Assembly (NCBI RefSeq): GCF_020745735.1
Contig: NC_083409.1
Span: forward strand, 88,246,048-88,310,047
Source: Hemiscyllium ocellatum
Taxonomy: Eukaryota
Length of the DNA stretch: 64,000 bases
Direction: 5' to 3'
Shown here: one piece after another, positions 13,681-60,172 of the stretch
How positions within the stretch are numbered: the first letter of the stretch is position 1
Layout: each line of letters starts with the position of its first letter
The notes under the pieces: generated by a model
What the model saw: the letters and a program-made list of their open reading frames with translations, nothing else
Databases searched by the model: none
What the model was told of the DNA's origin: nothing
Translations under genes and position numbers: made by a program

Positions 13681-14881
13681 CGGATCCCAGGCTGAAATTT
13701 GGCCTAATAGATCATGTTTCATTTGGTTTTAAAGAAATGGTCTTTCACTGAAACGAAAATGCATTGTTGCAGACTTTGTTTTGACAGATCATTAAGCAAA
13801 TGAAGTTAAAACAGAATGACCCAATCTATTTACTTACAATATAAAGTCAGAGAGATTTAAACACACAGTATAAGTATAACCTGGCAACCATGGCAATCTG
13901 CCTGGCTTTATGTCGGTGCTAAAAGGCAAGGCAAGGTAAAACAGAAGTATTGTGAGTCTTTAAGCTCTGGCTGATGGGGTTCAGTGCAGGACAAGACAAG
14001 GCAGGGGTGCTGTGTACATCAAAGTAAACATAAAATGAATGAGTACTGAGAGAGCAAGCGAGCAGCCCGGAGGTGCAGCCTGCTTGGGTCCTTGTCATTG
14101 TGTGCTTGGAGTCCTGGCAGCAGCATTCCACTCAAAGGTGCTTGTCCACCATTCAAGTGTGGAACCATCTTCTTAGCCAATCAGAAATGTGCCTTAAAGG
14201 TTTAAGGCTGATATGTACCTGATACCATTGTCCATGGGTGGGTGTAGATGTGGTGATCACTGCCCATGGAACAGACCCTGAGGTGTTGATGCATTGTGTC
14301 CAAGATGGAATTCCAGAGATAAAGCAGCAAGCTGGAGTTGCCTGGTAACTGTCTGACTTTCATATCAGGAACTGTTACAATCTAGCATCTATCTGACAGG
14401 TGGGAGAATAGGATAATACATATTAATGAGATAATAATGATATGTTAATACATGCAAGTAGTTCTCTCATGCATTAGCAAGAAACTCAACTCAAAGGTTG
14501 GTCAATGGGTCTTTCTAGTATCAACAATCAGAAGCTCCTTCCTGGACTTCATGTGATTTTCCAACGTTCTTGCCAATGCTCATGCCATTTAGAGGCTGGG
14601 AAAGTTCCACCCATTTTATTTGCTTTCGAGGATAAAGGCCACATCTTTTAAAAATTTATTTTTGGAGTGTGAGCTCTAAAATGAACATACAAGTTTAAGC
14701 CAAGGAGATTATGCAATGAAATGCCTGCAGTTTAAAAAATCATGTTTACAGGAACATGTTAAGTACAAATTTTGCATTTTCCTGGAACAGTGAGCAGAAG
14801 CAGACACCGTGGAGTCAATGTAGTCTGGATTAAGGGACAATTACTTAGCTACAATGTTTTGACTGGCTCCTGTCCAAGTGC

Positions 14882-14958
14882 TGAAGAAGGGCTTATACCC
14901 GAAATGTCGATTCTCCTGCTCCTTGGATGCTGCGCTTTTCCAGCAACACATTTTTCAG
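14882..14958 (+). mobile_element. 77-bp Penelope-like hammerhead insertion (family A)
   Basis: Starts at CTGAAGAAGGGC..CCCGAAA; TSD TCCTGTCCA(A/G)GTGC at 14868-14881 and 14959-14972. Confidence 0.85.
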
Positions 14959-15051
14959 TCCTGTCCAGGTGCCCAAGTCTTGTGCTGGGACAGTGCAATA
15001 GACACCCACTCCACTTGCAAAGAGAATGCATGAAAAAAAATCTCTCTCTAG

Positions 15052-15411
15052 GTCTATTTCTCACGTGTGGAGGTACCTGAAAGTCTCCAGTTACAGCTAG
15101 CTTCCTTCAACTTGCTTTCACTGCAAATTCTCATGTTGAAACAAAAAGCAGAAAAACACCTTTGGAGAGTCCGAAAGTGGAGAATTCTCAATAAGTGAGT
15201 AAGAAAAGTCCATTGGAATTCGTCCATCATACAGATCCTTCTTCCACTTTAAGATGCATTTTTCAAAATAGGTCTCAACAGCTGCTGAATGAAGATGTAC
15301 AAACTGCTTTTTGTCAACATCAAAGAATTGAAAGGAAGAGAAAAAACCCAATTTATCAAATTGTTTGGTCCAGATTGATAGACAACTATTTTACCATAAT
15401 TATCACATTAT
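15052..15411 (+). other. Candidate pair of in-phase exons (15052-15194 and 15272-15411), product unknown
   Basis: ctctctag acceptor, gtgagt donor, 77-nt GT-AG intron, gtaaga donor; spliced frame open for about 94 codons. No recognised homology. Confidence 0.25.
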
Positions 15412-15914
15412 GTAAGACTGTTTCTTTCCTGATTATAATTTGCAATTTTAATGTAGTTGCAATCCTCCATTTCAAAACCTCATGCCATGAAAGTTTTATT
15501 GAAACCACCATTTTGTTCTCAAGAAATGTATGTGATCTTGCGTCTTTTTATCTGCAATAATTTTAATTATTAACAAACAATTATAAATAAGAAAAGTTCC
15601 TTATAGAGATCTTTTTTCCATTTTAAGATGCATTTTTCAAATAAAAATGCTTCCACGTCCCTATTTTATGCATTCCATAGAAGTGTTGAATGTGCTTCCC
15701 TTACCATCATCTTTCCAGCAAGATAGTGGACAACGACATTTCAAAAACTACTTGCTCTTATTTAAAACTAGAACCGCAGACAATGAAACTGAAACTTGAC
15801 CTTATGCATAAAATATCTGTGATAACAGGCTACAAGGCAAACAATGAGCTTTTATCCTTTTTAGCATATGGACTGTAAATTGAAGATTCACGACATGACG
15901 GTGATTACATTTCA

Positions 15915-16092
15915 GCAAGAAAAACAATTTGCTTGTGCAACTCAGCAGGTCTGGCAGCATCAGTGGAGAGAAAGCAAAGTTAACATTTTCAGTCTGGTGA
16001 CTCTTCATCTACGCTACCAGACCTGCTGTGTTTCACCAGCAATTTCTGTTTTTGTTTCAAATCTCCAGCACCCACAGTTCTTTGTTTTACTC
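15915..16092. mobile_element. Penelope-like foldback (family C)
   Basis: CAGCAGGTCTGGCAGC faces GCTACCAGACCTGCTG in inverted orientation. Confidence 0.7.
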
Positions 16093-16214
16093 TTCCGAAA
16101 TAATTCATTGGCTCTGAAGCACCCTGTGTCACTCTGCGATAATGAAAGGTCCTATGTGTGTTCTTGCTCTCTTCCCTTCCACAGTGCTGCCACCTATTCC
16201 TGTCCTTTTTGAAG

Positions 16215-20074: not shown

Positions 20075-21425
20075 GTGGCTGCTCTCAATTTGAAGGTTGT
20101 GAGTTCCTGCTATGGGTCATCATGTGACTCAATAAGTTGACTCTCAACCCACAACCCTTTGGGCTCATGGGGTAGGATGTCTTACAAGGGGGTGATATCT
20201 GAAATGCAGGATTTATTTCCACCTCTTTTACTCTCTGCCACTGATCTTTCTCATCGTTGAGACATTGTGACTCAGAACATTGATGCAGTTGCCATTTTGA
20301 ATGGTTAATATCAAGCACTTGCTAGGTATTAATGTCAATGTTGTTACTAAAGAACTTTATTTGTCCTCCCCTGGAACATTAGCCGTTTGAGAGTTCGGAA
20401 GTGGGATCCAGTGAAGGGGATGCCTCATGAAGGACATTAGTATTTGATCAAAATAAAAGCAAATTCCTGCAGATGCTGGAATCTGAAACCAAAAGAGAAA
20501 ATGCTGGAAAATCTCAGCAGATCTGGCAGCATCTGTAAGGAGAGAAAAGAGCTGACGTTTTGAGTCGAACTGACCCTTTGTCAAAGTGTTTGATCAATGG
20601 TCTTCTCATCGAGTCTGAATGATGTGTCAGAAGTATTGTAAATGTATTCCCTCTTTCATGTGACTGATACATAATCCAGGTCTTGCTGCAGTGTATGAAT
20701 GTGTGGTGATAAGAACTGTTCTCTACACTAGGATATCTGTGGATTTGCAGAGGAGTTTTTTGTCAAAACATTCCTACTATAGTTTTCAGTGGGTTGGGCT
20801 GGTACAGCTGCTCCAGGATTGGATCTCCAAGCCCAATGGTAGCTTTTTGAAAGTGTTGGCTGCCAATGCATGGGAAGCACATATTCCAGAGTTTCTCCTT
20901 CAACATAAAAGGGATACAATATATGACTCTGCGGATGTCAGTTGTAGGTGAGTTTTGTTTGGGCAATGATCAAGAACAGGTACATTTCTTGTGTGCAGAA
21001 TTGAAGAGGTGGAAAATGGCTCTTAGATCTGAATATAAAGTGGACAATGGCACTGCAGATATCCACAAACTCTAGATTGTGTATGTCTATGGTGGTGAGT
21101 TTAGTTTAGGCACCACCAACTCTCTCCCTACACCCAGGTGGGCCAAGGAGAAATTTGTTTCATCTTTTTGTATGAGGTTTGAAGCAGAACTTTCATGAAA
21201 TGATGCAAAGTATGGGTCAGAATTTTAAATAACAGAGATTTTGACGATGCTCTAAATGAAGTACAGCTTAAAAAAATAGGGCAACGGGTATTCATGATAA
21301 CACCTGAAATCTGAACTGAAGCATTGGGTACCATTTGAGGGAGTGATGCTGGCCTGGTGTGAGGATGGAACAGAGTGCATCAGGGATTGCTGTCAGATCC
21401 CCCTTGTTATCCTTCATTGGATTCA
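20075..21425 (-). mobile_element. RTE-clade LINE relic
   Basis: VEGETLEYV/FPCIGSQHFQKATI resembles the RTE motif LEnVxxFPYLGSxLSxKA. Confidence 0.65.
20452..20584 (-). mobile_element. Penelope-like terminal repeat nested in the RTE relic
   Basis: TSD AGT(A/G)TTTGATCAA at 20439-20451 and 20585-20597; degenerate hammerhead at the right end. Confidence 0.8.
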
Positions 21426-22598: not shown

Positions 22599-23621
22599 AA
22601 TAGAAACATAGAACATAGAATATAGAACATTACAACGCAGTACAGGCCCCTTGGCCCTCGATGTTGCGCTGCCCTGTCATACTAATCTGAAGCCCATCCC
22701 ACCTACACTATTCTATGTACGTCCATATGCCTGTCCAATGACGACTAAATGCACTTAAAGTTGGCGAATCTACTACCGTTGCAGGCAAAGCATTCCATAC
22801 CTTTACTACTCTCTGAGTAAAGAAACTACCTCTGACATCTGTCTGATATTTATCACCCTCAATTTAAAGCTATGCTCCCTCGTGCTCGCCATCACCATTC
22901 TTGGAAAAAGGCTCTCCCTGTCCACCCTATCTAACTAGTGCCCCTCCACCAAATTCCCTCCCCTCTACCTTTTAGCTCAGCCCGCTTGGCACACCAGCCT
23001 CATTCCTGAAGAAGGGCTTATGCCCGAAACATCGATTCTCCTGCTCCTCAGATGCTGCCTGGCCTGCTGTGTTTTTCCAGCACCACATTTTTCAACTCTG
23101 GTACTCCAGCATCTGCAGTCCTCACCTTCTCCTATTTCTACCCTATCTAACCCTCTGATTATCTTGTATGTCGCAATTAAGTCACCTCTCAACCTTCTTC
23201 TCTCTAATGAGAGCAGCCTCAAGGTCCTCAGCCTTTCCTCATAAGACATTCCTTCCATATCAGGCAACGTCCTAGTAAATCTCCTCTGCACCCTTTCCAA
23301 AACTTCCACATCCTTCTTATAATGCGGTGACCAGAACTGTACACAATACTCCGAGCATGGCCGTACCAGAGCTTTGTACAGCTGCAGCATAATCTCCTGG
23401 TTCCGGAACTCAATCCCTCTATTAATAAAGGCCAAAACATTGTGTGCCTTCTTAACAACTCTGTCAATCTGGGTGGCAACTTTCAGGGATCTGTGTACAT
23501 GGACACCAAGATCTTTCTGCTCACCTGCACTCCCAAGAATCTTACCATTAGCCCAGCACTTTGCATTCCGATTACTCTGTCCAAAGTGTATCACTTCACA
23601 CTTGTCCACATTAAACTCCAT
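22599..23621 (-). mobile_element. CR1 LINE with (TATGTTC)n tail, 5'-truncated
   Basis: MEFNVDKCEVIHFG...LERVQRRFTR ORF; (ATAGAAC)n at about 22600-22629. Confidence 0.95.
22936..23136 (+). mobile_element. Penelope-like hammerhead insertion (family A) inside CR1
   Basis: TSD TC(C/T)ACCCTATCTAAC at 22921-22935 and 23137-23151; hammerhead at 23002-23037. Confidence 0.9.
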
Positions 23622-27208: not shown

Positions 27209-27366
27209 TCGGGTTAAGCAGATCAATGTGTTTCCCCCAATGCACATCTGAGGAGAACCAAGGTTTCCTGGTTTCCTGGTTTCCTGGACCATCCCTGCCT
27301 CCCTATTGCCACAGGAATGATCTGGGTCATCCCAGGCCAGCTCTATTGCATGCTCCTCAAAAAGGG

Positions 27367-27529
27367 TCACATGACACCAGGTTATAGTCCAAAAGATTTA
27401 TTTGAAATCACAAGCTTCACAAATCCCCTGATGAAGGGGCAGTGCTCTGTGATTTCAAGTAAACCAGATGGACTCTAACTTGGTGTGACTTCAGACTTTG
27501 TGCACCTCAGTCCAACACTGGTACCTCCA
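27367..27529. mobile_element. Penelope-like foldback (family B)
   Basis: Inverted arms; CTGATGAAGGGGCAGTGCTC core; TSD CCTCAAAA(A/G)GGG at 27355-27366 and 27530-27541. Confidence 0.8.
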
Positions 27530-30257
27530 CCTCAAAAGGGGTGAGGATCTTTCTGCTTGGTATCCCTCCGCCAGACGTGAGAAGAGTGCCCTGCAAAAAC
27601 ATAAAGAGGAGGACTGAGTGCAAGCTACTTTATGCATGTGGACAAATGTGTGAGCTGGTGAAACATCCCCAGAAAGTGAGTAGGAATTGCAGTGCTTAGG
27701 AAGGGTTAGTTGTTTGTTTGAGAGGATGATGTGGGTGTGAGATTTTGAGTACACATCATGAACACAATGCTAAGGCTTGCAGATTACTAATCTTTTGTGA
27801 GATGCCTATTGCAGTGACAGAGTTAGTCTGAGTAATGCCCTCATACATATGAGTGATCAGAGAGAAAAAAGTGTCACTTAGCCTTATGGCACTGCAGCTA
27901 AGTGCCTGCTCTCTCAGTCCAGGCTTGACAGGTTTGATGGGATCATCCCCTGGTGCCATCTCCAGAAAGAGGACCTTCCTTCTCTTTCTTATTCTACCGA
28001 GTCACATGTGTATTGATGCATCACTAAACCAAAGTCTTTGGGGGCACCATCAATGAGGATGGGAGCAATCAACACAGACTCCTTGAAAATCCTTGTTTGC
28101 AGCTTCCTGCTTACTTACCCCTTGCAATTTACTGAGAAACATGTGGAGCATCTTCTTTGCATAGATAATGAGTTGAGAATCACGCTAAGACCTGAGCCAA
28201 ACTGGCCTATGTCATGACAGAAGTGACAATCTTTAACTTGCTTGTCATTGTCGCTTATCTCCAAAATGGAAATTCCTGACCACGATGTGCACCCATGTGT
28301 AACAGGAAAGGGGAGAGGAATTGAATCAAAGGAGTCAATTGGAAGACTGAGTAGTTCTGTGAAACAGAATCTAACAAACTGGAATTGTCAGGGGGGAAGA
28401 GACTTGCTTGGACTGATGGAGCTTTGTGAGGGGAAAGGTGTCCTGGAGGGAAAATGGGTTGAAGGAGATGGACGAGGAATCATATATTTGAATGTTGTGT
28501 GAAGGTCAGAGAAATAGATTACATGGACTAATTCACGGTCAAGCATGTAAATATCCACAAGGTAATATATAACATTTAAAATGTAAATACCAATTGTCAT
28601 ACTTACTTTGGGTTTTTAAAACAAAATCAATTTGTAAGGATTCTTTCCATTGTAGATAACAATAAACACAATAGAAACACTGAACAAGCCATGTTCTGCT
28701 TGATGCTGTATTGTGGTGAAAATGTCTTAAACTCTACATTATTGCCTTCAAATCCATGAAGAACTCCCTTTTTAACAATTATAAAAATTGAACCAACAGA
28801 CATTTTTTAAAAAAAGTTAGTCTCCTTCAATTTAAATGTCTGCATAACCTGTCTTATCAACAAATAATGAGGAGTAAAACAGGGGGGCATACATATAAAT
28901 GGTGTGAAATTGATTCAATGTCTATTCTCCTGATACCATTGTCATTTTCTTAGATGTTGTACAGATAAATCTCTGGACTATTTCAGGGGAGTTTGATTTA
29001 TTTGAGTAACATTCCAGTTTGTATGTGATTTTACAGTTGTTACATACAGCCCATGGGCCTGACAGGAGACATGCAGCCTTTTTAATCCTGTTTTATGAAG
29101 AGACTGTAAAAGTGCTGACCTTGTGGGATGCAGTGATGCGATTCTCAAAGGCCTCCTTTGGCCCCCAGGGAATAAACAGCTATGCGTAAACTGACAAATT
29201 ATCATGTCAGCGCATTCATCCCATCTCCATTGTACCCTGCCATTTCCCCTAAGAACAACCATCTGGAAATACATAAACCTTTTTAATAATGGTTTGCTTC
29301 TAGTTTCTCAATGGTATCAATGCTGAATGGAAAGGACACATTTAAACCATCCAATTTCTCCAGAAATTTGATAGAAATTTACATCAGCATCATAAAGACT
29401 ACTTTAAGGATAATGTCGCTTCTCATAGGAAGGGACAGGATTGGGACATGATATGATTATGCTAAAAGCATAGAACAATATAAGCTGTCACTGGGAAATA
29501 CGAGTTAAGTGTTAAATCGAAGATGAAAAGGAATGGCAATAACCTGCAGCAAAGTTTGAATTGAATTTTTCACTTAAATTGTGGTCTATAAATTCAACCA
29601 TGTGATACTGTCTTTCAGGATGCTAACTGGTCTAGTACATCCTTCACATGGTGGGCAGGAAGCATTCATATATTTGCACCCTATCCCTTCCTACTTGGCC
29701 CTCAGCACCTCTCCCACTGTCTTTTGTGGTTTGACCATTTCTCCTGATTCTTATGCTTCAATCATACTCTTCAACCTCCATGTTTTGTCTTTATCAATCC
29801 TGGTCTCTGACTCCCTGCTCTTTCTTATTCTAAAGCACTCTGCCCTTTGATCCCAACTTCTTAGTTACACTTACTCAAGAACCAGTACCACACTAAAAGG
29901 GCCTGATATTCTTCTATGTCAATTGGTTGCTTTTGTCACATTAGCTCCATTGTCATAGAGCCAAAGAACAATGTTAGAGAATTTGCAGATCTTAGCATGC
30001 TAGGGCAGGAAACAGACTCTATACATTGTGACCCCAAATATTACAGGATGATACAAATCCACTTTATGTGTCCTTTACTTTACTGGACATATTTTTGGAA
30101 TGAGTTGTAACATAATATAATTTTAGTTCACCTTCTCTGGATTTTTTTACAAGGGGTGTATTTCTGATGTACTTGGTCTGGCCATATTGAGTCAGGAACC
30201 CAGTTCCTGATAGCTTCCATATTCTAATCTGACAATGCTGCTGTGTTGCTCACTCAA

Positions 30258-30608
30258 CAAAAACAGAAATTACTGGAAAAATACAGCAGATTTGGAATTG
30301 GCTGTAGAGAGAAAGCAGAATTAGCCTTTTGGGTCCAGCGAAAAACGGTTGTGCAGACAAAGGAATGCGTGGGCAGACTGACCTTTACCAAATTCTTTGT
30401 CTGCCCAACTGTTTTCCTTTTTGTCTGGGCTCCATCTTCAACTATTGTTTACTTCTTCCCCTTCCCCTCACCCCATCTTCAGTGTACATATCAACCTTTT
30501 CCCAGTTATCATCAGTTCTGATGAAGAGTCTCTGGACCTGAAACATTAACTGCTTTTTCTCCACAGATGCTGCCAGACCTGCTGAATATCTCCAGCAATT
30601 TAAGTTTT
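30258..30608. mobile_element. Penelope-like foldback (family C)
   Basis: Inverted termini; exact repeat TGTTGCTCACTCAA at 30244-30257 and 30609-30622. Confidence 0.85.
30513..30552 (+). ncRNA. Minimal type I hammerhead ribozyme motif (family C)
   Basis: CAGTT-CTGATGA-A-GAGTC..GACCT-GAAA-CA-TT-AACTG; stem I is CAGTT/AACTG. Confidence 0.65.
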
Positions 30609-31051
30609 TGTTGCTCACTCAATACTATTGTATCTTGAAACATAGGTTCAGGATAGATGCTACCTTGGCATCTAATTATTGGCATCAAGCATTAACAGGA
30701 GGTGGAAACTGCCTTTAGAGTTCAAGCAGCAAATCCAGATGGCAGCCATGATGGGTCTGCATTTCCTTGCAGAACACAGCAGACAGAACATTGGAAGCTC
30801 AGCAGTCTCAGCAAGCACAGCAATGGCCAAATGGAAGGTAAAGTTCTAGTGCAAGCTTCGAACATATTTTTGTATTTTAAAAGCTTTCACTTTTCCCCAA
30901 ATCAGGTCTGACAGCTGGGCAACAATGTGCTTTTCACCTTTGAAAATTGCAGTTCTGCAAGCACTGCCCCTTTAACAAACTCCTGAAGGAAACTGGACCA
31001 ATAATTAAAGGTCAGGCCTCTTTGGCTTTTGCTGCCACCTCACCTCAATAG

Positions 31052-31522
31052 CTGAAAATGTGTTGCTGGAAAAGCACAGCAGGTCAGGCAGCATCCAAGG
31101 AGCAGGAGAATCGACATTTCGGGCATGAGCCCTTCTTCAGGAATGAGCTTTCTTTCTTTGTCTTTTTGAGGGACTCACTGAAATCCTTGTAGAGGGAGGA
31201 AGAGAGCTTCTTCAAGGAAGGCATCCTTGCAAGAGGATTCGCAGGAGATTAAAATCTTCGAGGAGAAAGTGAGGACTGCAGATGCTGGAGATCAGAGCTG
31301 AAACTGTGTTGTTGGAAAAGCGCAGCAGATCAGGCAGTATCCAAGGCGCAGGAGAATTGACGTTTCGGGCATGAGCCCTTCTTCAGGAATGAGCCTCATT
31401 CCTGAAGAAGGGGTCATGCCCGAAACGTCGATTCTCCTGCTCCTTGGATGCTGCCTGACCTGCTGCACTTTTCCAGCAACACATTTTCAGCTCTGATCTC
31501 CAGCACCTGCAGTCCTCACTTG
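31052..31522. mobile_element. Penelope-like element with three terminal-repeat copies (family A)
   Basis: Two minus-strand repeats and one plus-strand repeat; TSD CACCTCA(C/T)CTCAATAG at 31036-31051 and 31523-31538. Confidence 0.9.
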
Positions 31523-31769
31523 CACCTCATCTCAATAGTGCAGTTTTCAAATTACAGCCACACCATTCCCAAACAGATTCAATCGAAGGCCTATTGCAGG
31601 AGTTTTGTGTGAACAAATGGAGGCTTTCTCTAAAATATGGCTGATTCATGGTCCTCTGTACCCAGATTCTCGGCCAGTTTCTTGCTGTACAGGTGGTTGT
31701 CCATCAAAATTATGGCTGACATTGGTGGCTATTCATTCTTGCCCATATGCCAGATTCTTGTGAGTAAAA

Positions 31770-33350: not shown

Positions 33351-33963
33351 TCATTAATTCACCTCCATCTACATCAAAGTCAACACTGCTAGCAACTGAC
33401 ATTAAATATCCAAAAGCATTGGCTCAGATATCAATGAAGGGAAGGGTTAGGGGAGGAAACATTGTGGCACAGATACACAGACCTCCTGCTAAATTTGGAA
33501 GCATTACAACATTTTTCTTTCATGCTTTACTTGGCAAATGGTCAAATAGATGGGCTAACTTGGTGCCTAATGTGAAAACTAACTCCAGGAAACCATAGGT
33601 AGAAACTTTTGAGGAATGCCCAGAAGAGATGAGGGAGTAATAAATTAGAGATTGGTTGGTGAGAGATTGGCAATTGTGGGAGTGAGAGGTCAGGATGAGG
33701 GTGGGTGAGGTGTAGGAGATGATTGCTGGGTCTTTGATGCCTAAGTAAGTTTTAAAAGCAAATTTGGTTCCCCATTGCACTGACAACTTGATTTAAATAT
33801 GTTAATGAACTGTTCCATCTCTTCAAAATAAAACACTTTCACAACACGAAATGCTCTATCTTAACAACAATCGTATGTATTTGATAGGTTATAGGTTTTA
33901 CCATTCTTAATCTGCCTTCGAACCTGTCTGTCCTTTCATACATGAGGTTACTATCAAGATCAT

Positions 33964-34777
33964 GATGTGGAGGATCCAGTGTTGGACTGGGGTGGACAAA
34001 GTTAAAAATCACACAAAACCAGGTTATAGTCCAACAGGTTTATTTAGAAGCACTAGCTTTCGAAGCACTGCTCCTTCATCAGGCGGTTGTGGAGAATAAG
34101 ACCATAAGACACAGAATTTATAGCAATAAGTGTTCTCTGACTGGGAGGAACATCCGGTCTGGTGATTGTTGTACGGTGTCCAATGTACCAAGCCTCGGAG
34201 CATCCTTGCCTACAGAATATGAGATAGACAATGTTGGTTGAGTCACATGAGTACTTGCATGTACACAATGGATGATGTCCCCATGGGTAATGGTGGTATC
34301 CGTATCGACACACTGACACATCTTGCAGTGGTTGACATGACAGGGTTGTACAGAGTTGTTCATTGATGTTGTCCTGAAGGCTGGGTGGTTTGCTGGGAAC
34401 AATCACCTATTTAAGGTTTGGCGGTTGTTTAAAAGCGAGAAGTGGAGGTGTAGGGAAGGTCTTGGTGAGATGTGCATTATCATTGATAATCTGTTGCAGG
34501 CTGTGAAGAACATGGGCATAAATTTTCAGCTCCCGGAAAGTACTGGACAAAGTTTTAGGATTTACATAGCAATGAAACAAAACCTGCCACCCATTCTAAT
34601 AGATGAAAGACTTAACAACAATCCAGACCTGTTCAATATATAATTTCAGTTGCATGACACTGTAATCTTTTGCTATAAATTCTGTGTCTTATGGTTTTAT
34701 TCTCCAAAACCACCTGATGAAGGAGCAGTGCTCTGAAAGCTAGTGCTTCCAAATAGCCTGGTGTTGTGTGATTTTTA
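33964..34777. mobile_element. Penelope-like foldback (family B) with a GIY-YIG endonuclease relic
   Basis: Minus ORF CQPLQ..YSCDSTNIVYLIFCRQGCSEAWYIG; inverted terminal repeats; exact TSD ACTATCAAGATCAT at 33950-33963 and 34778-34791. Confidence 0.9.
34711..34746 (+). ncRNA. Minimal type I hammerhead ribozyme motif (family B)
   Basis: CAC-CTGATGA-A-GGAGC-AGT-GCTCT-GAAA-GC-TA-GTG; second copy on the minus strand at about 34051-34085. Confidence 0.75.
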
Positions 34778-41914: not shown

Positions 41915-42957
41915 GTTAAAAATTACACAACACCAGGTTATAATTGTTGGGCTGAAGGGCCTATTTCCATACTGTAGGATTCTAAAAAAAAAGTCCGACT
42001 GGTTTATTCGGAAGGAGCACTTCATCAGATAGCCAGTGGGGCAGGATCATAGCACACAGAATTTGCACCAAGATCATATAACTGATACAATATATTGAAC
42101 AAACCTAGATTGCTGTTAAGTCTTTCATCTTTTAGAATGAGTTGCAGGTTTCGATTCATTAATATGTAAATCCCAGAGCTTCTTAGTCACATTCCTGAGA
42201 TAACTTAAGGTTTATTAAGAAAGTGGCATCTTAGCTCAAACAATGCGTTAAAGTGTGAGATTAGAGCATATCTGTATTCTAATCTTGAGTCAGACTAATT
42301 CTATTTCCAAAGCAGGAATTTATAAATGGTCACACGGATTGGTGTCTGCAGATTGTGTGCTTTTTGAGTAAAATAGTATAGATCTGCATATACAATTCTG
42401 CAAATGCAAATTCATCCCATGAACTTATTTGTGTGTGCGGGTGCATGGAAGGGAGGGAGAGAGAGAGAGATTGTGTGAGAGAGTGCATGTGGATGTGTGT
42501 GTGTGTATGCTTGGTAGTGTATGCATTTTATATGTAACATGTGATATTTTATAAATTTCTTCTTTGGAAATAGAACCAGTCTGACTCAAGATTGGAATAC
42601 AGACAGACTCTAGCCTCACACCTTTAATACGTTGTCTGAGCTGAGATGTCACCTTATTTTATAAAACCTTAAGTTATCCCAGGAATGTGACTTGAAAGAA
42701 GTTCTGGGATTTACATATTAATGAATCGAAACCTGCAACTCATTCTAAAAGATGAAAGACTTAACAGCAATCTGGATTTGTTCAATATATCGTATTAGTT
42801 GCATGACACTATGATCTTGTGTTATAAATTGTGTCCTATGATCCTGCCCACTAGCTACCTGGCAAAGTAGCAGCGCTCTAAAAGCTAGTGCTTCCGAATA
42901 AACCTGTTGTGTGATTTTTAACTTTGTCTAACCCTGTCCAGCACCAGAACCTCCTCA
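41915..42957. mobile_element. 1-kb Penelope-like foldback (family B) with long inverted arms
   Basis: About 41915-42330 is the reverse complement of about 42555-42925; flanks TCAATTCTAATGAA/TCAATTACAATGAA; a 50-bp SINE/CR1 tail is inserted at 41943-41992. Confidence 0.85.
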
Positions 42958-43897
42958 TCAATTACAATGAATACAAAACTTCATAACCAAGGCTTAATTC
43001 ATATTTCTAATTATATTCCTTATGTCTGTTATGAGCATTGAATCTATTGTCCACATATGTTACCAATCCCTTTCTCTTTTAGTTATTTCCTTTTGCTCTT
43101 CACCAAATCATGTGACTCAAACCCTTTCCCAACTTATTTGCTGCCATGACAGTTTGGGTTAAAATGTGCTAAATGATCACCTTCTGAACTGCAAAACTTT
43201 TGTTTCTGTAAATTTAGTTAAAAGGAAGAGCAAAACTGCTGTTTTATGTAATCCCTTAACATTAATAATATGCATTTGTTGGGCACCTTGAACGTGACAA
43301 AACATTCACAGGAGTATTACAAAGAAAAAAAAGATCAAATCAAAGAAGTAGTTATTAGGGTAGATGGCCAACATTGCAGTCTAAGAGTAAGGTTTGAAGG
43401 GATTATATAAATGAAAAAAGAGAGGTAGGCAAACAATGAGTTATGTTTTCATAAGGCAAATAACTTGAATCAGGAAATTTTCCAATTTTCACTTGAAGTG
43501 GATATACGCTTGTAAAAACAAACTAAAAAGCTTTTGTGATGCAGTAGTGTTATCCTTTGTACCAGGGGGCTTACGTTCAAGGGTTTCACCAGCTCCAATG
43601 CATAATGTCTCCGTCGAGGTTGATTAGAAAATACTTAAAAGTACATTGATTAATATTCAGACCATACATCAGCAATATCTAATCCTTTAATAGCCACATC
43701 AAACTTTCAATCTGACTGTGAACTCAACACATCCGGCTGTAATGATTATAGGTTTGCTTTGGGCTGATGTTCATCATGGCAAAATAATAGCTCTTGGGAA
43801 ATGTCAACAAAAACCTCTATTGAAATAATGAAAATATGGTATTTTTCATTCAATTATACCAGATATCCTGTTAATCAAATAAATCTGTAAGATTATG

Positions 43898-46697: not shown

Positions 46698-47285
46698 TCC
46701 TTATTCACTCATGAGATGTGGGCATTGCTGGGTAGCTAGCATTTATTGCTCATCCCTAATTGCCCTTGGGAATGTGATGGCAAGCTCCCATCTTGAACTG
46801 CTGTAAGCCACATGGTGTAGGTAAAGTCACAATGACATTTGGGAGGGAATTCCAGGATTTTGACATACTGCCAGTAAAGGAACAGTGATATATTTACAAG
46901 TCAGGAGGGTGAGTGACTTGGAAGGAATTGCAGCTGGTGGTGTACCCATATGTCTGTTGCCCTTGTCATTTTAGATGGAAATGGTCAAGGGTTTGCAAAG
47001 TGCTGTCTCAGGATTCTTGACAAATTTCTGCAATGTGCCCTGTAAATAGCATACACTGCTATTGATTTGGGAGCGACGCTCCGAAAGCTAGTTAAACCTG
47101 TTGGACTATAACCTGGTGTTGTGTGATTTTTAACTTTGCTGCTACTGAGCATTGGTGATGGAGGGAATGAATGTTTGTGGATGTGGTGCCAATCAAACAG
47201 GCAGATTTAACCTGGATAATGTCAATTTCCTGAGTTGCATTTATTCAGGTAAGGGGGCAGTATTTCATCACATTCCTGATCTGGG
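46698..47285 (-). mobile_element. LINE 3' end (CR1/L2 group) with a nested Penelope-like repeat at 47066-47138
   Basis: ATTTATTGCTCATCCCTAATTGCCCTTG tail; nested insert flanked by CTGCTA(T/C)TGA at 47056-47065 and 47139-47148. Confidence 0.7.
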
Positions 47286-47922
47286 CTGCAAATATTTCCC
47301 AGGCTGGCTGGGGCTAGTGGCCATTGGTGTTGGTCAGCAATTAAAAAGTACTCCCCTTGTCTTTGCCATCTCATCCACAAATACCTTGGGTCCCTGTTTA
47401 CAAACCAAGAATGAACTTTCCTCTTCCCTGGGCCATGTCCTTAAGGGAGAGGCTTGACCACCATCGAGAGTACAGGGGTAATTTCTGACTTGCAGCATCT
47501 GAAATGATTTGCATCATTTTTTAAATATGCTGACAATGGTGTGAATGCCAGAAGGTACTGGCAGTAACAAACTCTACCTCCTCTCCACGTGATTCCCTGA
47601 GAGAGGCATTCACCAAGCCAGTGAGGCGAGGATATGAAAGTTGCAAGAGAAATATGACTTTGAGTTATACCAGGCTCGATGCCATGAGTCTCACTTGACA
47701 AAACTATTTAACTGAAAATGGGTAAGTTCTGCTCACTATGTTAATGTCAATACTCAGCTCTATCACTTGAACATCTCTCTGGCCCCTCCACTGTCTTTAA
47801 ATGATCAGACATTAATACTGAGTACTGTATGAAAAGAAGTTTCCTCCCATGAAACTTTTGGAGGACTGATACCATTTGTTACAAAGTCCTGTCCCTTGTC
47901 ACTGACTCCATTCCTTCCATGG

Positions 47923-48065
47923 GGTAAAAACAATGACTGCAGATGCTGGAAACCAGATTCTGGATTAGTGGTGCTGGAAGAGCACAGCAGTTCAGGCAAC
48001 ATCCAAAGTGCAGCGAAATGATGCTGCCTGAACTGCTGTGCTCTTCCAGCACCACTAATCCAGAA
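47923..48065. mobile_element. Compact Penelope-like hairpin element
   Basis: 48-bp inverted repeat; exact TSD TCCATTCCTTCCATGG at 47907-47922 and 48066-48081. Confidence 0.9.
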
Positions 48066-49389
48066 TCCATTCCTTCCATGGCAACTATTTGAGGCTAAGC
48101 CAGACTGTTGGTAAACTTGGTCATTTCTGACCACCAGATGAAATGCTGTCACATCACCAGGGCCATCAATAAACCATTTATTTACAGCTCCATAATGTCT
48201 CCCACATCTCTCCTGCCTCAGCTCATCAGTTGCTGAAAACTGAATTCATACTTTGACCATCTCTAAACATGATCTTTACAATATACTTCCGGCTGGATTC
48301 CCTTGTCCTTACTTTGGCCAGATCCTGACCCCCCCCCCCCTCCCTATACTTACTGACCTGTGTTGTCTCCTTAGCATGCAACAATCAATTTTAAATTCTC
48401 ACCCTTTTGTTTTCAAATCCTTCCCTCCTCTCTGTCATCACCCTGAGCTCCACAATCTTCAGGTATCTTTACTCATTTCAATCTTAAGCATCCCTCATGT
48501 CAATCACTCCACCATTGGTGACCATTTCTTCACCTACTCTGGAATGCCGTCCCTTAACATTTTTGTCTATTTCTATTTCTCTTCTCTTCTTTGACTCAGT
48601 CAGAACAGTTTTCAACATAAAGATCCAATAAGGCAATTTGGAAATGTTATTATGCTAACATTTGAGATATGGAAATTGTTATTAAATTGCAAATTTCATG
48701 GAGTAAATTCAGCCTTTATGCACTGATTGGTTAATATACAATATTCTGACTCCAGAAATGAATCAAACATTTGGCACACATCACAATTATTCTCTAATTC
48801 ATGGCTTGCCAAATACAGGGTGCCAAACAAAATCAAGATGAAAGCCAACAAGGCATATGTCTGTTTATGGAAACTACTATCTAACTGTGAACGTATGAGA
48901 AGTGTTAGATCAAACTTGGGATATTTAATTCTGATGCAGCTTACTCAATTATGACGGCACAATATTGCCTAAAAGATGGCCCTGATCTTAGGGGTGGTGA
49001 GTGGCCAGGTTGAATGTGTATGAATGAGGGTGAGTAGGAGAGGGTTGGGGTGGGATGTGGTGAGGGAGACCCTGGTGCCTGGAGTTGTGATTTCTTTCAA
49101 CAAGCTCCAAAGTGTATACTGTATTTCCCATTTGAGACCTAAAGTGGCAACTGAGTTGTTATTAATGTCACAAGAATCTCTTGGGGTGCTGCTGTTTCAG
49201 GAGGTGGGAGCGCTGGCACAAATAAACTCATGTTTGTGAATAGAGTGCATCTATTTAAAGCTGCTGTCACTACCTGCAGTTTGGGGGCTTCAAGTTAAAA
49301 ATCTACAAAGTTCATTGGCAACGCATCACTTCTGCAAATGTGTTGCTGGTCAAAGCACAGCAGGTTAGGCAGCATCTCAGGAATAGAGA

Positions 49390-49425
49390 ATTCGACGTTT
49401 CGAGCATAAGCCCTTCATCAGGAAT
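49390..49425 (-). ncRNA. Minimal type I hammerhead ribozyme motif (family A)
   Basis: ATTC-CTGATGA-A-GGGC-TTAT-GCTC-GAAA-CG-TC-GAAT on the minus strand. Confidence 0.75.
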
Positions 49426-49584
49426 AAGCTTAAACTTGAAAGCCTTTTACTGAGGCAATATCTGTTAGCTAGAAACAAATTGATCCTAAAACCCTTCAAC
49501 CCCGAGACTTTTTGAACTCTGTGTCATTCACACCTCTCTGCAAAAAAAGCCAAGGACTCCATCACCTTGTTAAAGGGGCAGCTT

Positions 49585-49585
<1 letters not shown>

Positions 49586-49631
<46 letters not shown>

Positions 49632-50100
49632 TCCTTGTTCAATGTGTTGTCACGCTGCCTGTATCTCTATTCCCATTTCAATGTTTTGTCACTCTCTCTC
49701 TATTTGTACGGTGTATCTCTGTCTCTCTCTCTACCTGTTTAGTGTCTTGTCACCCTGACTCTCCATACTTAGTTCAATGTGTTGTTGCTATGTTTCTCTC
49801 TATCCCTATTTCAGTGTGTTCTCACTGTATCTCTGTCTCTCTAAACCGAGTTCAGGTTGCTGTTTCTCTGTATCTCTGTGTTCACGGTTCAGAGTGCTGG
49901 CTGCCCTGGTCTCTCTCTCTCTTGTTCCAACTCTGTGTGTTATCTGTCTGTCCTTCTCCTTACCCAATTCACTGTGTTGCTATTCTATCTCTTTCTATTC
50001 TCAAAATACAGTGTGTTGGTTCTCTGTCAGTCTCCAGTACCAGTTAAAGAGTGTTGTCACACACTCTGTCCCTCTACCAGTTAAAGAGTGTTGTCACACA
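49586..50100. repeat. (CT)n microsatellite plus degenerate minisatellite (GTGTTGTCAC...CTCTCT...GTTCAGT units)
   Basis: Pure CT run at 49586-49628; recurring 35-40 bp units; final TACCAGTTAAAGAGTGTTGTCACAC duplicated exactly. Confidence 0.8.
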
Positions 50101-50275
50101 CCGAAACGTCGAATTCTCTATTCCTGAGATGCTGCCTAACCTGCTGTGCTTTGACCAGCAACACATTTGCAGCTGTGATCTCCAGCATCTGCAGACCTCA
50201 TTTTTTACTCAACGCATCACTTCTGCCAGCTATGATACTCCCCACACCCTGAAGTTTCATTCCTCTCAAGTGACT

Positions 50276-55140: not shown

Positions 55141-55195
55141 TCCACCACTATTATTATTGTTTCTGCCAATTAAATCAGGGACTATAGATTTATGT

Positions 55196-55401
55196 CGAGA
55201 GTGTGGTGCTGGCAAAGCACAGCAGGTCAGGCAGTATCCGAGGAGCAGGAAAATCAACATTTTGGGCAAAAGCCATCCTGACGAAGGGCTTTTGCCCGAA
55301 ACATTGATTCTCCTGCTCCTCGGATGCTGCCTGACCTGCTGTGCTTTTCCAGCACCACACTCTCGACTCTAATCTCCAGCAGTCCTCACTTTCATCTAGT
55401 T
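55196..55401. mobile_element. Penelope-like foldback (family A)
   Basis: Inverted arms around CTGACGAAGGGCTTTTGCCCGAAAC; TSD GACTATAGAT(T/G)TATGT at 55180-55195 and 55402-55417. Confidence 0.9.
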
Positions 55402-57395
55402 GACTATAGATGTATGTTCAGTATTACTTGTAGTCTACTTTGTTTCCATATTGCTTGTTGGATGCAACTATTTATCTCTGAAATGTTCAGTGATGATGGT
55501 GAGAAATATTAAAGATGTTATAATATGAGTAATATAACAGATTTGCTGAAATCTTTACTGATATTGGTTTTTCTCCAATGACTTCATTCTACTATGTCAA
55601 TTTGGATGGAATGTATTTTCTACTTCATGTTGAAAGCCAAGTGACTTTTGGTGAAAGAGTAAAGTGGACAATATTCAGTTAATCACCTACTATTCATTGC
55701 ACCCAGTGGAGGGTAAACTGGGAAAGGTGTATAACATGTGGTTAATTTTGTACTGAATTAGACCAAAGTTAGTGAAAGTGAGCCCACCTACGCATTGGAT
55801 AAACCATTTAACAATCAGATATAGACACAACTCAGTTCTTTAGCATAGTATAAACTTCCACTGGTATTCAATTTCTTTCATTAGCAGGTGTACTCTTAAC
55901 TCTGGAAGTTTATATTTTTCCACATCACTTTTTCCCCCTCCATCTTTGAGTCTTTAACTCTCAGACCAAACTTTTGGTGAGTTGTCTTAATATCTCTTCA
56001 TGTGATGCAGATTTAAATTTTGGCTGATCATGTCCTGTTAATCATCTTGGGGGACATTTAACTATTTAAAGGCATGATATGACTGCACATTGTTATTGTT
56101 CATGGAAACTTAGTGATAGATGTGTGTTTGGGCACCTCGATTCGGGGAGGTGATGTTCAACTAGCTGACATGACAGAAAGCAGACCAAACTGGGAAAAGA
56201 TAATGCTAACCTTCCCAATCTAAATGTGAAGCTGTGGGACATACCTGGAGACTGAATTGAGCTTCCTTGGAGCTACACTCCAAACCAATGTTGGCTGATT
56301 TGAAAATGATAGGTTAAGGAGGAAGGGGTAGTAGGTGAATGGCTTATGTCTCCCCATTGACTTTATCACTAAAAAAAAGACATATCGACATTTTTATTAC
56401 TATTGAAAATTTAATGCTAGATTTATGTTGTGATGCATTTTACCATGCTATTTTTCCATTATAAATAATTGTGATATATAGATGATTCACACATGATAGC
56501 ATCCAAAAAATTATATAGTTAATCTTCCCAGTACAATTACATTACTACATTATTGTAATTTTAAAAAAATGTCCATGTGGTTATTAATGTGTGTGCAGGA
56601 ACAATTTATATTTGCAACCTGGTTCAATACAAACAAACTGCTTAATATTCTATTTATTAGTTTGATTAAGTCTAGACAAACCGTATTAAAAAAAAAGTCA
56701 ACTATTCTCTGGGTGCTATAATAAACAGCCCTTTAACGTCTGAATTTCAACCAGTCCAGAGTTGGCTAAGTCTTATCAGTTGTATGAAGTGGCATTAGTG
56801 TTGGTGAAGTCCTGCTGAAGGACAGCTGCTGTTCTCTCCAGTACTTGATGGCAGTGGATATGGTGGTCATTCCTCCTCACAGTCAACTCAGATCCCCTTT
56901 TTAAGCAGAACGTGAGCCACTCACCAAACGCAGAAGGTTATGGCCAACTCCAATACTCCCGTCCCCCAAAATCAACAACTAGGTATCCAAAGCTTTGTCA
57001 GAGTGGTTTTATCCTGAGCTGGAAAAGGATCTTAACTTCACCTCATGCAGGTGAACTTACAGAAGCATTTACCACTGGCATCCAAAGGTATTATACCATC
57101 CTATCACATTCCTCAAGGGCATGTCTAAAGTGTGTTACAAATTACAAAATCCATGTGGTAATCCCTTAACACTTTACGCAAACAGTTGAGTCAAGACAGA
57201 GCAGAGGAATGTAAGAAATAGGATCAAGAATAGACCATATAACTTGTTCAACTTGTTCTGCTATTCAGTAGGATCACAGCTGATCTTTGACCTCAACTCC
57301 AGTTTCCCATGATCTGGATATCTCTTAATTCCCTCAGATTTCAAATTATCTCAGTCTTGTAGGTTGGTGAACTTGATAGATTGATAATTATTTGT

Positions 57396-57718
57396 GGGGC
57401 AACACAGTGGCTCAGTGATTGGCGCCAGAGACCCAGGTTCAATTCCAGCCTTGGCCGACTGTCTGTGTGGAGTTTGCACATTCTCCCTGCATCTGCATGG
57501 GTTTCCTCCAGTGTTCTGGTTTCCTTCCACAGTCCAAAGATGTGTAGGTTAGGTGGATTGGACATGCTAAATTGCCCATAGTGTCCCGGGCTGGGTGGAT
57601 TACTCATGGGAAATGCAGAGTTACAGGGATAGGATAGAGTAGAGGGTGTGGGTCTGGGTGGGATACTCTTCTGAGGGACCTGATGGGCTAAATGGCATGC
57701 TTCCCCCATGTAGGGATT
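57396..57718 (+). mobile_element. HE1-like V-SINE inserted into an old CR1 fragment (57212-57800, minus)
   Basis: B box GGTTCAATTCC and V-domain. Confidence 0.8.
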
Positions 57719-58050
57719 GTATTTGATAGAAATAAAATTATCCTCACTGCAGTCTGGAATGGCCATCCCTTCATCTTGAAACAGTGTTTCCTAGTTATGG
57801 ATGCCAGGTTTGGATAATGTTGAATCTATGGAAGTTTGAAGATGAGAAACTGGTCAGCAGTGCATTGGAATAGTTGTGCCCAGAGGGATAAAGACATGGA
57901 TGAGGGTCTCAGCAGCTGCTAAACTGAGAGAGTCTGGAGATGGATGATGGTATGGAGTTGGTAATAAGTGGTCTTAGTGTAGATACATGGACAGTAACTC
58001 AATGAAGAGCAGACAGTGGTTGCTAGAATAATTAGTAGAAGCGAAATAAA

Positions 58051-58278
58051 GCTGAAAATGTGTTGCTGGAAAAGCGCAGCAGGTCAGGCAGCATCCAAGG
58101 AGCAGGAGAATCGATGTTTCGGGCATGAGCCCTTCTTCAGGAATCATTTCGGGCATGAGCCCTTCTTCAAGAGAGCCTGCTGTTGTTCTCTCCAGTACTC
58201 CTCATTTGAACAACTTCTTTTTCCAATCCTCCCACTTTCAGCTCTGATCTCCAGCATCTGCAGTCCTCACTTCCTCCG
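58051..58278. mobile_element. Penelope-like foldback (family A)
   Basis: TSD AGAAGC(G/T)AAATAAA at 58037-58050 and 58279-58292; TTTCGGGCATGAGCCCTTCTTCA duplicated in tandem. Confidence 0.85.
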
Positions 58279-60172
58279 AGAAGCTAAATAAATGCTTGTA
58301 AGAAAACAAAAGTGTGGAATTAGCAATCTGGGAGTTGGAAACAATCCTGGTAATTCATAAAGAAAGAAATTCTGTGATCCAGTAAAACACAGCTGTGCTC
58401 ATTCATTTATACAGCATCAGGAGCCCTCAGCACCAATCCTGTTTGGTTTTACTGGTTAATCTGAGACTGGGCAGGGCACTTGTGTTAAAATGTGACAGGG
58501 GTGTGATAATGATGTACAGGGAGTGCCTGGACTATATACCTGATATGTAACCCCAACAGCTAAGTTAAAGTGGTAGGATGTGGGAAATGTGTGTGAGTGG
58601 TGCTTCCTGGCCATAGATGTGACTTAAACTACATTATTGCTGGGCATTAGAAGTGAGGTTCAAATCAATCAAGTTTTAATTGCTTCATCTGCGGTTTTTA
58701 AACAATCTGATTTTAATGCCATAGACTGACCCAAAGGAAGGAATCTCACACTGCTTTGAAGTCAGTTCAGGTCTTCATTTACAATTTACATGCTAGATTT
58801 AGTGTGGCATGAATAATTTTCACCTTACCCCCACAGGGGAGCTTTTCCTTGTTCCTGTTCCTGCGTGGCAAAAAAGAAAAATTGGATGGTGCAGACTGCA
58901 TCCAAATGGATGGAAAATCATAGGAATTTTCAAATGATTCTCCTTGTCTAAATTTTCACTATTTGCAGCATTCGGGTAATCCTGTATCAGTCAGAATATG
59001 ACCACGAAAACCTATCCCATAGAGTGGCAGGCTCAGAAAGGTGTTTAATGTAGAACGTATCTTTTGGGGAAGCTGTAACCCAGCTTCTAACCTTTGAGCG
59101 AGAAATGCTGGATTCTGAAATTTGTTTCTGATGTGCTTCACTGCAAGAAGCACCAAATGCATTAAAAACAAAGTGAGATACATCAACTGAAGCATTGATG
59201 CTTTAATCAGTCAGTGTTTTAAGAGGGTGCCATTGCAGCAGAACGTTATTCCCTGGAAATAAGATCCATTGAACCAATACATTCACTTGCATTTTGGTGT
59301 AAGGGTTGATTTACTGCTCTGTGATTACATAGTTAATGGGTTTCTTTCAACTGAAGTAAAGTTCTAAGTGTGTCATTATGTCTGTAATTGATTTATTGAA
59401 TAATTTATGCTGTGTTTATGCCAATCTAAGGTCAAACCAAGATATCCAGATTGGATTATGCATTTTAAAGCTGAAGGGAATTTAGTAAACATTACAGTTC
59501 TGATTTTAACCAGCACTGGGAATCGGGTGACAAAGCAAGCATCAAACTCAACCTGACCCTTGTGGTGTGGGGTTTCAGGCAATTTTAAGTCATCCACCAG
59601 TCAGCTGCTGTCCCTGGTTCCTCAAAGAGATTAAAATTGCATTTGTGGCTTGATTACATCAGAGGAGCATGATCTGCCCATTTTAGGAATGACCAAACGA
59701 ATTGCAGACCGGCATCCATCCTCAATGCCCAGATGAGTGGGTTAAATTCAAAGATGACGGGATCAGCATTGGACATCAGCAAATCCGGTTTCCGATAAAT
59801 TTCCTGGCAAGCAGGGAAGGGTTAACATCCGTGTGTAAGTTGGACAGGATAATCAATGGGCAAAAAGAAATGAAGATCAAGGTCAATAGGAAGAACATAT
59901 CAATGTGAGGGCATGATACTATACTTGTGCCCAAGAGGAAGTATAGGATTGTATGCGAGCTTTGCTGAGTAACTGACAAAGCGGATTTATTTACAAGGAA
60001 GTCTGCCCTGTTTTGGAATCCACTGAACCCTGTCTAAAGGATAAATAATGCACCATGCCCCTGCCAGCAATAGCAGTGGAACATGTTCCTCAGCAATACA
60101 TTTCCATAATTTCAATCTTTGACGACTTACCTGATGTATGTTACTGATGCTACCATGTAAGTTCCCATAAAG

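What the first reader, a model, noticed from the sequence alone, without database searches (positions are those of the whole stretch)
14868..58292. Foldback insertions with 10-17 bp TSDs and junction microhomology suggest priming from both target ends
Seen: at least 13 Penelope-like inserts have long flanking direct repeats, starting at 14868, 20439, 22921, 27355, 30244, 31036, 33950, 41901, 47056, 47907, 49319, 55180 and 58037. Most consist of two inverted arms covering the same terminal segment, one arm shorter. The shorter arm typically ends where the TSD matches element sequence (CTGC at 49332-49335, ACT at 34778, ATC at 48065-48067, TGTT at 30609). Inference: both 3' ends of a staggered cut prime reverse transcription on overlapping RNA segments, giving MITE-like structures by a retro route. 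This differs from L1 twin priming, where the inverted parts do not overlap.
Basis: partly seen in the sequence, partly recalled or inferred. Interest (0 to 1): 0.75.

Follow-up and report, generated by a model that had tools for sequence, protein, structure and literature searches.

The report
Penelope retrotransposon stubs inserted as foldbacks
These are short, hammerhead-ribozyme-bearing end pieces of Penelope-like retrotransposons in a shark-like genome, inserted as back-to-back pairs with one 30-40-base "tail"; this is the published insertion signature of that element class, and its details fit cDNA priming from both cut DNA ends.

Summary
Eleven of the 13 listed inserts have flanking direct repeats of 13-17 nt that chance does not give. 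Site 41901 is borderline and 47056 is at chance level. One insert (22921) has a paralogous empty site with a single copy of the repeat.

All inserts are 3'-terminal modules of at least five subfamilies of minimal-hammerhead Penelope-like elements (PLEs). There are eleven foldbacks in the window.

Arm outer ends are bimodal. They fall at a distal site (S1) or at a site 26-43 nt upstream (S2). The "shorter arm" is therefore the arm without the published PLE "tail", not a random truncation.

Ten of the 11 foldbacks pair one S1 end with one S2 end (P <= 0.006). Microhomology between the target duplication and the element at S2 ends is real: 23 nt summed over 12 junctions, against 4.4 for random sequence and 7.1 for permuted flanks.

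The architecture (inverted 5'-truncated copy, one-sided tail, variable duplications) is already published. So is the in vitro finding that a PLE protein cuts and extends both strands from two internal start sites that bound the tail. Earlier follow-ups in this scan reached the same "ordinary PLE" verdict on other pieces of this genome.

Read-based empty-site tests could not be run.

The parts
14868..14972 (+). Single-arm PLE stub (family A). Insert 14882-14958, ends at S2. Duplication 14868-14881 / 14959-14972 (13/14).
20439..20597 (-). Single-arm stub (family C) with tail (S1 end at left). Insert 20452-20584. Duplication 12/13.
22921..23151 (+). Single-arm stub (family A) with tail. Insert 22936-23136. 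Duplication 14/15. Paralogous empty site in LINE copies at 7753-8004 and 63267-63518.
27355..27542 (.). Foldback (family E). Insert 27368-27529. Left arm short, right arm with tail. Duplication 12/13.
30244..30622 (.). Foldback (family D). Insert 30258-30608, arms 30260-30341(-) and 30512-30608(+), both ending at S2. Arms only 72% alike. Duplication 14/14. Microhomology 2 and 4 nt.
31036..31538 (.). Composite insert 31052-31522 with one duplication (15/16). It holds a short inverted arm 31052-31147 (S2), a 112-nt spacer, an inverted arm with tail 31260-31393, and a forward arm 31395-31522 (S1). The last two arms meet in a palindrome with 1 nt between them.
33950..34791 (.). Foldback (family E). 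Insert 33964-34777. Left arm with tail (S1), right arm ends at S2 with ACT microhomology. About 400 nt of unique DNA lies between the arms. Duplication 14/14.
41901..42971 (.). Long foldback (family E). Insert 41915-42957, arms about 320 nt at 84% identity, (CT)n near the centre. Left end S2, right end S1. Duplication 12/14 (borderline).
47056..47148 (+). Single-arm family E fragment 47066-47138 ending at S2. The 9/10 flanking repeat is not distinguishable from chance.
47907..48081 (.). Young foldback (family B). Insert 47923-48065. Left arm with tail (S1), right arm 48020-48065 ends at S2. Arms 98% alike, 16-nt centre. Duplication 16/16. TC microhomology.
49319..50226 (.). Young foldback (family A). 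Inverted arm 49336-49428 (S2, CTGC microhomology), 672 nt of unrelated filler with (CT)n and about 100-nt tandem repeats, then forward arm 50101-50209 (S1). Arms 100% alike over 67 nt. Duplication 17/17.
55180..55417 (.). Foldback (family A). Insert 55196-55401. Left end S2, right end S1. 12-nt centre. Arms 90-92% alike, with differences at CpG sites. Duplication 15/16.
58037..58292 (.). Insert 58051-58278: inverted arm 58051-58147 (S2), about 90 nt of filler, then a forward tail segment to S1. Duplication 13/14.
37861..38029 (.). Arms 37861-37938(-) ending at S2 and 37924-38025(+) ending at S1. No duplication detectable.
15919..16089 (.). Arms 15919-16011(-) ending at S2 and 16011-16089(+) ending at S1. 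No duplication detectable.

Best explanation
The inserts are 5'-truncated, non-autonomous end pieces of Penelope-like retrotransposons. Each runs from the 5' edge of the minimal hammerhead to the reverse-transcription start region. They were inserted by the element's RT-endonuclease at staggered cuts that leave 13-17-nt duplications.

Reverse transcription starts inside the template RNA at one of two discrete sites: S1 (distal) and S2 (26-43 nt upstream). The stretch between them is the published PLE 'tail'.

In a foldback, both 3' ends of the staggered break are used as primers, one at S1 and the other at S2. Each makes a cDNA of the same terminal segment, and the two cDNAs are joined head to head. 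Often both have run to the same 5' boundary of the module. Sometimes unrelated filler DNA lies between them.

At S2 the last 1-4 bases of the target overhang usually pair with the template.

Shown here: element identity, single-event insertion, the two discrete end sites, the one-S1-plus-one-S2 rule, and the microhomology.

Inferred: that the second arm is RNA-templated from the second target end, and not copied back from the first cDNA.

The confidence given (0.6) is for the dual-priming mechanism. Identity as PLE stubs with the known architecture is about 0.95.
For: Identity:
- The hammerhead core box (CTGAWGAAG, 6-18 nt, GAAA) occurs 10 times against 0.15 expected.
- Helix II shows compensatory changes across subfamilies.
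- The architecture matches the published PLE hallmarks.

Single event:
- One duplication flanks both arms in 9 foldbacks.
- Insert 22921, a single-arm stub, has a paralogous empty site with a single copy of the repeat.

Two start sites:
- A profile search puts 10 arm ends at positions 93-104 and 11 at positions 130-133, with none between.
- Tail length is 26-43 nt.

Asymmetry:
- Ten of 11 foldbacks have one S1 end and one S2 end. The binomial P is at most 0.006.

Composite 31036:
- The forward arm stops at S1, although its mirror arm continues past S1 through 112 nt and a further unit.
- So the outer end is a start site, not the run-off end of a copied strand.

Microhomology at 12 S2 junctions:
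- Values are 2, 4, 2, 1, 2, 4, 2, 3, 2, 1, 0, 0 (sum 23).
- Random genomic 10-mers give a mean sum of 4.4 (0 of 200,000 trials reach 23).
- Permuted flanks give 7.1 (P = 6.5e-5).
- Shifted registers give 4-6.

Same source for both arms:
- Own arms are 92-100% alike in 49319, 47907 and 55180, against 83-87% to any other copy.

In vitro precedent:
- The anole PLE protein cleaves and extends both strands.
- It starts at two internal sites that bound the tail (PMC11167929).
Against: - The sample is one 64-kb window: 11 foldbacks and 12 junctions.
- Inner ends of the two arms are often close to each other (1, about 10, 12 and 16 nt apart in 31036, 37867, 55180 and 47907). A copy-back hairpin would also give that.
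- Frangieh et al. (2024, PMC11167929) report that initiation needs no homology to the cleaved DNA. The microhomology could therefore arise at a joining step, not at priming.
- They also saw no difference in start-site use between strands. That does not by itself explain the one-S1-one-S2 rule.
- No PLE open reading frame lies in the window. The only reverse transcriptases there are APE-type LINEs.
Confidence: 0.6

Rival explanations
1. Copy-back (self-priming) route. Only one target end primes. At the template's 5' end the cDNA turns back and copies itself. The returning strand is then joined to the other target end by microhomology-mediated annealing.
For: Near-symmetric centres: 1 nt at 31393/31395, 12 nt in 55180, and 16 nt in 47907. 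Arkhipova et al. (2013) inferred self-priming from palindromes at inverted junctions. Own arms are nearly identical in young copies.
Against: A copied-back strand should end where the first cDNA began, or run on into the flank. That would give equal ends, yet 10 of 11 foldbacks have unequal ends at two specific sites. In 31036 the returning arm would have had to stop at S1 although its template continues for more than 200 nt. A 1-nt centre is too small for a hairpin loop. The arms of 30244 are only 72% alike beside a perfect 14-nt duplication, which fits two templates better.
Confidence: 0.22
2. The foldback already exists in a transcribed master copy and is retrotransposed as one unit by ordinary single-end priming. 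The short arm is then just 5' truncation with end-joining microhomology.
For: Microhomology at 5' junctions is usual for truncated LINE insertions. Own arms share private variants in 49319 and 55180.
Against: All five family-A foldbacks have different inner junctions and centre contents. Short-arm ends cluster within about 12 profile positions in five subfamilies, instead of spreading as truncation points do.
Confidence: 0.06
3. Two separate insertions. A second copy homes into the end of an earlier one, or the endonuclease later cuts within the tail of one arm.
For: PLE endonuclease is reported to recognise the element's own tail region. PLEs also insert into their own copies.
Against: One duplication flanks the whole foldback, and there is no inner duplication. 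The arms of young foldbacks are equally young.
Confidence: 0.05
4. True MITEs moved by a DNA transposase.
For: Inverted arms and flanking direct repeats.
Against: Duplications vary from 13 to 17 nt. The two ends are unequal. Single-arm copies with the same ends exist. The arms carry a retroelement ribozyme.
Confidence: 0.01

Closest known systems
Canonical EN+ Penelope-like element insertions (Penelope/Poseidon/Neptune type), as described by Evgen'ev & Arkhipova, Arkhipova 2013 (PMC3846280) and Craig 2021 (PMC8557442)
   Same: Minimal hammerhead in the terminal repeat. An inverted 5'-truncated copy at the 5' side. A 30-40-bp tail at only one end. Variable target duplications. Occasional partial tandems and captured unrelated DNA.
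   Different: The copies here are only 75-1040 nt long, with no reading frame. They belong to shark-specific subfamilies. Duplications (13-17 nt) are longer than the 8-10 nt reported for rotifer copies.
Anole Poseidon PLE (PAc) in vitro reaction (Frangieh 2024, PMC11167929)
   Same: Two discrete internal RT start sites that bound the tail. Both DNA strands are usable as primers. The distance from the hammerhead cut site to the start sites is of the same order, about 65 and 97 nt here.
   Different: That study reported no homology between the cleaved DNA and the start site, and no strand difference in site use. Here, S2 junctions show 1-4 nt of microhomology, and foldbacks pair one S1 end with one S2 end.
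L1 twin priming
   Same: The second target 3' end primes on the same RNA by short microhomology and gives an inverted 5' part.
   Different: In L1 the inverted parts cover different, non-overlapping segments, and the 3' end is a poly(A) tail. Here both arms cover the same terminal segment and start at two fixed internal sites.
Metazoan non-LTR retrozymes (hammerhead tandem repeats; bioRxiv 10.64898/2026.07.22.740005)
   Same: Short non-autonomous hammerhead units related to PLE terminal repeats.
   Different: Retrozymes are defined by tandem arrays. Here only one 246-nt partial tandem (in 31036) is seen, and the rest are solo or inverted copies.

Membership tests
Penelope-like element (EN+), truncated or non-autonomous copies | Minimal type-I hammerhead motif in the terminal repeat | tested here: met
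   The core box occurs 10 times against 0.15 expected. Helix II has compensatory pairs. Rfam hammerhead models give no hit, as expected for motifs that lack helix III.
Penelope-like element (EN+), truncated or non-autonomous copies | Inverted 5'-truncated copy joined head to head | tested here: met
   Eleven foldbacks in 64 kb.
Penelope-like element (EN+), truncated or non-autonomous copies | Optional 30-40-bp tail at one end only | tested here: met
   Tail of 26-43 nt. Ten of 11 foldbacks have it on one side only.
Penelope-like element (EN+), truncated or non-autonomous copies | Target duplications of variable length | tested here: met
   13-17 nt at 11 sites. Empty paralogue for 22921.
Penelope-like element (EN+), truncated or non-autonomous copies | Telomerase-like RT plus GIY-YIG endonuclease reading frame linked to these terminal sequences | tested here: inconclusive
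   No such frame lies in the window. The reverse transcriptases present are APE-type LINEs. The autonomous partner elsewhere in the genome could not be searched with these tools.
MITE (DNA transposon derivative) | Identical terminal inverted repeats and a fixed-length duplication | tested here: not met
   Unequal ends, duplications of 13-17 nt, and variable inner junctions.
L1-type twin priming | Poly(A) 3' end and non-overlapping inverted segments | tested here: not met
   No poly(A). The arms overlap fully.
Non-LTR retrozyme | Head-to-tail tandem array of hammerhead units | tested here: inconclusive
   Only one partial tandem, of 246-nt period, inside 31036.

The most novel reading that the evidence does not exclude
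Each foldback records a concerted, asymmetric double priming by one PLE particle. The two 3' overhangs of a single staggered break start cDNA at two different adjacent template sites, one at S1 and one at S2, never both at the same site. A few bases of primer-template pairing set the exact S2 start. If so, these genomic footprints would be in vivo evidence for a dimeric, two-ended form of target-primed reverse transcription. That would explain the long-unexplained inverted repeats and one-sided tail of PLEs.
Probability: 0.4. Interest if true: 0.55.

Novelty: new member of a known kind. Interest (0 to 1): 0.3.

Why it matters
The insertion mechanism of Penelope-like elements is still called undefined in the literature.

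These shark stubs are abundant, short and cleanly bounded. A genome-wide count of end pairing (S1/S2), junction microhomology and centre structure could therefore test, in vivo, the two-strand and two-start-site behaviour so far seen only in vitro.

For annotation, the stubs are ordinary PLE debris. They should not be read as MITEs, as microRNA hairpins or as a new ribozyme element.

Tried and rejected
No reads were laid, and I did not try another route.
- Rfam at gathering thresholds found nothing in the window. At permissive thresholds only microRNA hairpin models matched the palindromes, all below their cut-offs. Hammerhead models miss these minimal motifs.
- I looked for duplications around six further copies (10608, 13616, 15921, 17828, 32030, 37867) and found none.
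- I looked for paralogous empty sites for all 13 inserts. Only 22921 has one.
- No target motif was evident at the 24 inferred nick sites.
- Microhomology at S1 ends could not be scored, because the template beyond S1 differs between copies.
- Pyatkov et al. (2004, PMC522041) is not held in the library.
- I considered and rejected three other readings: mobilisation as LINE-dependent SINEs (no shared 3' end with the LINEs in the window), DNA-transposon MITEs, and a fixed master foldback.
- A long-range stem (CAGATGCTG / CAGCATCTG) that encloses S2 is predicted, but it shows no covariation, so it remains unproven.
Full report
**What is there**

The window is vertebrate-like DNA rich in interspersed repeats.

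I scored each repeat as matches minus twice the mismatches. Eleven sites score 10-17. In 300 random position pairs searched the same way, a score of 10 or more occurred in about 1%. Site 41901 (12/14; right copy at 42958-42971) is borderline. Site 47056 (9/10) cannot be told from chance.

For insert 22921 I rebuilt the empty site and compared it with the rest of the window. It aligns across the junction to two copies of the host LINE, at 7753-8004 and 63267-63518, and each carries the 15-nt repeat once. That duplication therefore arose on insertion.

**Identity**

The inserts fall into at least five related subfamilies. All carry the hammerhead core box followed by a helix II hairpin and GAAA.

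- The box occurs 10 times in 64 kb against 0.15 expected.
- Helix II keeps pairing through changes on both sides across subfamilies.
- Rfam's hammerhead models do not match. That is expected, because these are the 'minimal' hammerheads without helix III described for Penelope-like elements (PMC4209133).
- That paper also notes pairs of such motifs 100-700 bp apart on opposite strands.
- No PLE reading frame lies in the window. The reverse transcriptases present are APE-type LINEs.

The inserts are therefore truncated or non-autonomous PLE end pieces.

**Anatomy**

A profile built from the arms finds 24 matches from families A-D in the window: 22 well-supported arms plus a partial duplicate and a weakly matching right arm, both inside 58037. 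Family E adds several more arms.

The 3' (outer) ends of the A-D arms are bimodal:

- 10 arms end at profile positions 93-104 (S2);
- 11 arms end at positions 130-133 (S1);
- none end in between.

The difference between partners is 26-43 nt. The tail is a 30-40-bp extension described as present at only one end of PLE insertions (PMC8557442 and PMC3846280).

Eleven inserts are foldbacks. Ten of them have one S1 end and one S2 end. One (30244) has two S2 ends, and none has two S1 ends. If the two ends chose a site independently, unequal pairs could make up at most half of foldbacks, so this ratio has P <= 0.006.

Single arms use either site:

- S2: 14868 and 47056.
- S1: 20439, 22921, 17828 and 32030.

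**Microhomology**

At 12 S2 ends, the element sequence beyond the arm end is known from the partner arm or a close relative. For each, I counted the consecutive bases of the duplication that match that continuation.

| Test | Sum over 12 junctions |
|---|---|
| Observed (2, 4, 2, 1, 2, 4, 2, 3, 2, 1, 0, 0) | 23 |
| Random genomic 10-mers | mean 4.4 (0 of 200,000 trials reach 23) |
| Flanks permuted among junctions | mean 7.1 (P = 6.5e-5) |
| Flank shifted by 1-5 nt | 4-6 |

The microhomology is real. The end positions still lie within a few bases of one site in every subfamily, so pairing adjusts the junction but does not choose it.

**One event, not a master copy**

Own arms are 92-100% alike in 49319, 47907 and 55180, but only 83-87% like any other copy. 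The two arms of an insert therefore come from one source.

The five family-A foldbacks all have different centres:

- 31036: 1 nt between the arms;
- 37867: about 10 nt;
- 55180: 12 nt;
- 49319: 672 nt of unrelated DNA with (CT)n;
- 58037: about 90 nt of filler.

A fixed, transcribed foldback master is therefore excluded, and so are true MITEs.

Many arms stop at the same inner boundary, the 5' edge of the hammerhead (CTCATTCCTGAAGA). Where both arms reach it, the junction is an almost perfect palindrome.

**Which mechanism**

Frangieh et al. (2024, PMC11167929) showed in vitro that an anole PLE protein:

- cuts and extends both DNA strands;
- starts reverse transcription at two internal RNA sites;
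- and that the sequence between those two sites is the tail.

The genomic pattern here is what that behaviour would leave if both 3' overhangs of one staggered break primed cDNA.

Composite 31036 is the most telling case. Its forward arm ends at S1. Its mirror arm runs on through S1, a 112-nt spacer and a second unit that ends at S2. The outer ends are therefore start sites, not the run-off ends of a strand copied back from the other arm.

A copy-back route was proposed from junction palindromes by Arkhipova et al. (2013). It would need a sequence-specific stop 26-43 nt short of the template end in 10 of 11 cases.

The arms of 30244 are only 72% alike beside a perfect 14-nt duplication. That hints at two templates, but it is a single case (about P = 0.06).

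Copy-back is still not excluded. Several centres are nearly symmetric, and the sample is small. I put dual-end priming at about 0.6.

**Comparison and novelty**

Every structural feature is published for PLEs, and dual-strand extension is published in vitro. Earlier follow-ups of this scan on other pieces of the same genome reached the same verdict for like structures.

What this window adds is quantitative:

- discrete S1 and S2 ends in five shark subfamilies;
- a one-S1-plus-one-S2 rule in foldbacks;
- significant 1-4-nt microhomology at S2, which the in vitro study did not see.

It follows from both primers starting near the same end of the template.

**Limits**

No read-based or cross-species empty-site test was possible, and I did not try to obtain it by another route. 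No sequence in this work was taken to be human. The only human-related item is a match of a PLE palindrome to an Rfam microRNA model, and I did not follow that up with any sequence search.

Noticed in passing
window 31349-31439: The PLE palindrome (two facing hammerhead halves) matches the Rfam model mir-3179 over its full length with sequence-level similarity (58.5 bits, E = 4e-10). The score is below the family cut-off of 90. Some annotated microRNA hairpin families may descend from, or be confused with, PLE foldbacks.
   Followed up: no
window 60718-63621 and 7700-8188: An intact 967-aa LINE reading frame (APE endonuclease plus RT) sits at 60718-63621. A 489-nt 5'-truncated copy of its 3' end, 99.6% identical, lies at 7700-8188. 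Both end in a (TTCTATG)n-like tail. This looks like a recently active CR1-like LINE.
   Followed up: partly
window 49585-49630 and 42444-42483: Two long foldbacks (49319 and 41901) each have a (CT)n microsatellite in the unrelated DNA between their arms. PLEs are reported to favour microsatellites, so this filler may be captured or template-switched sequence.
   Followed up: partly
window 31052-31393: Two units in direct order 246 nt apart (D3 copies at 31050 and 31296), joined by a 112-nt spacer found nowhere else in the window. This shows that the template RNA continued beyond S1, as in a tandem (retrozyme-like) source.
   Followed up: partly
window 23000-23136, 31396-31528 and relatives: The predicted long-range stem CAGATGCTG / CAGCATCTG encloses S2 and forms the first part of the tail. 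It is conserved in families A-D but shows no covariation.
   Followed up: partly
window 30260-30341 vs 30529-30608: The arms of foldback 30244 are only 72% alike, although its 14-nt duplication is perfect. The two arms may have been copied from different subfamily RNAs.
   Followed up: partly
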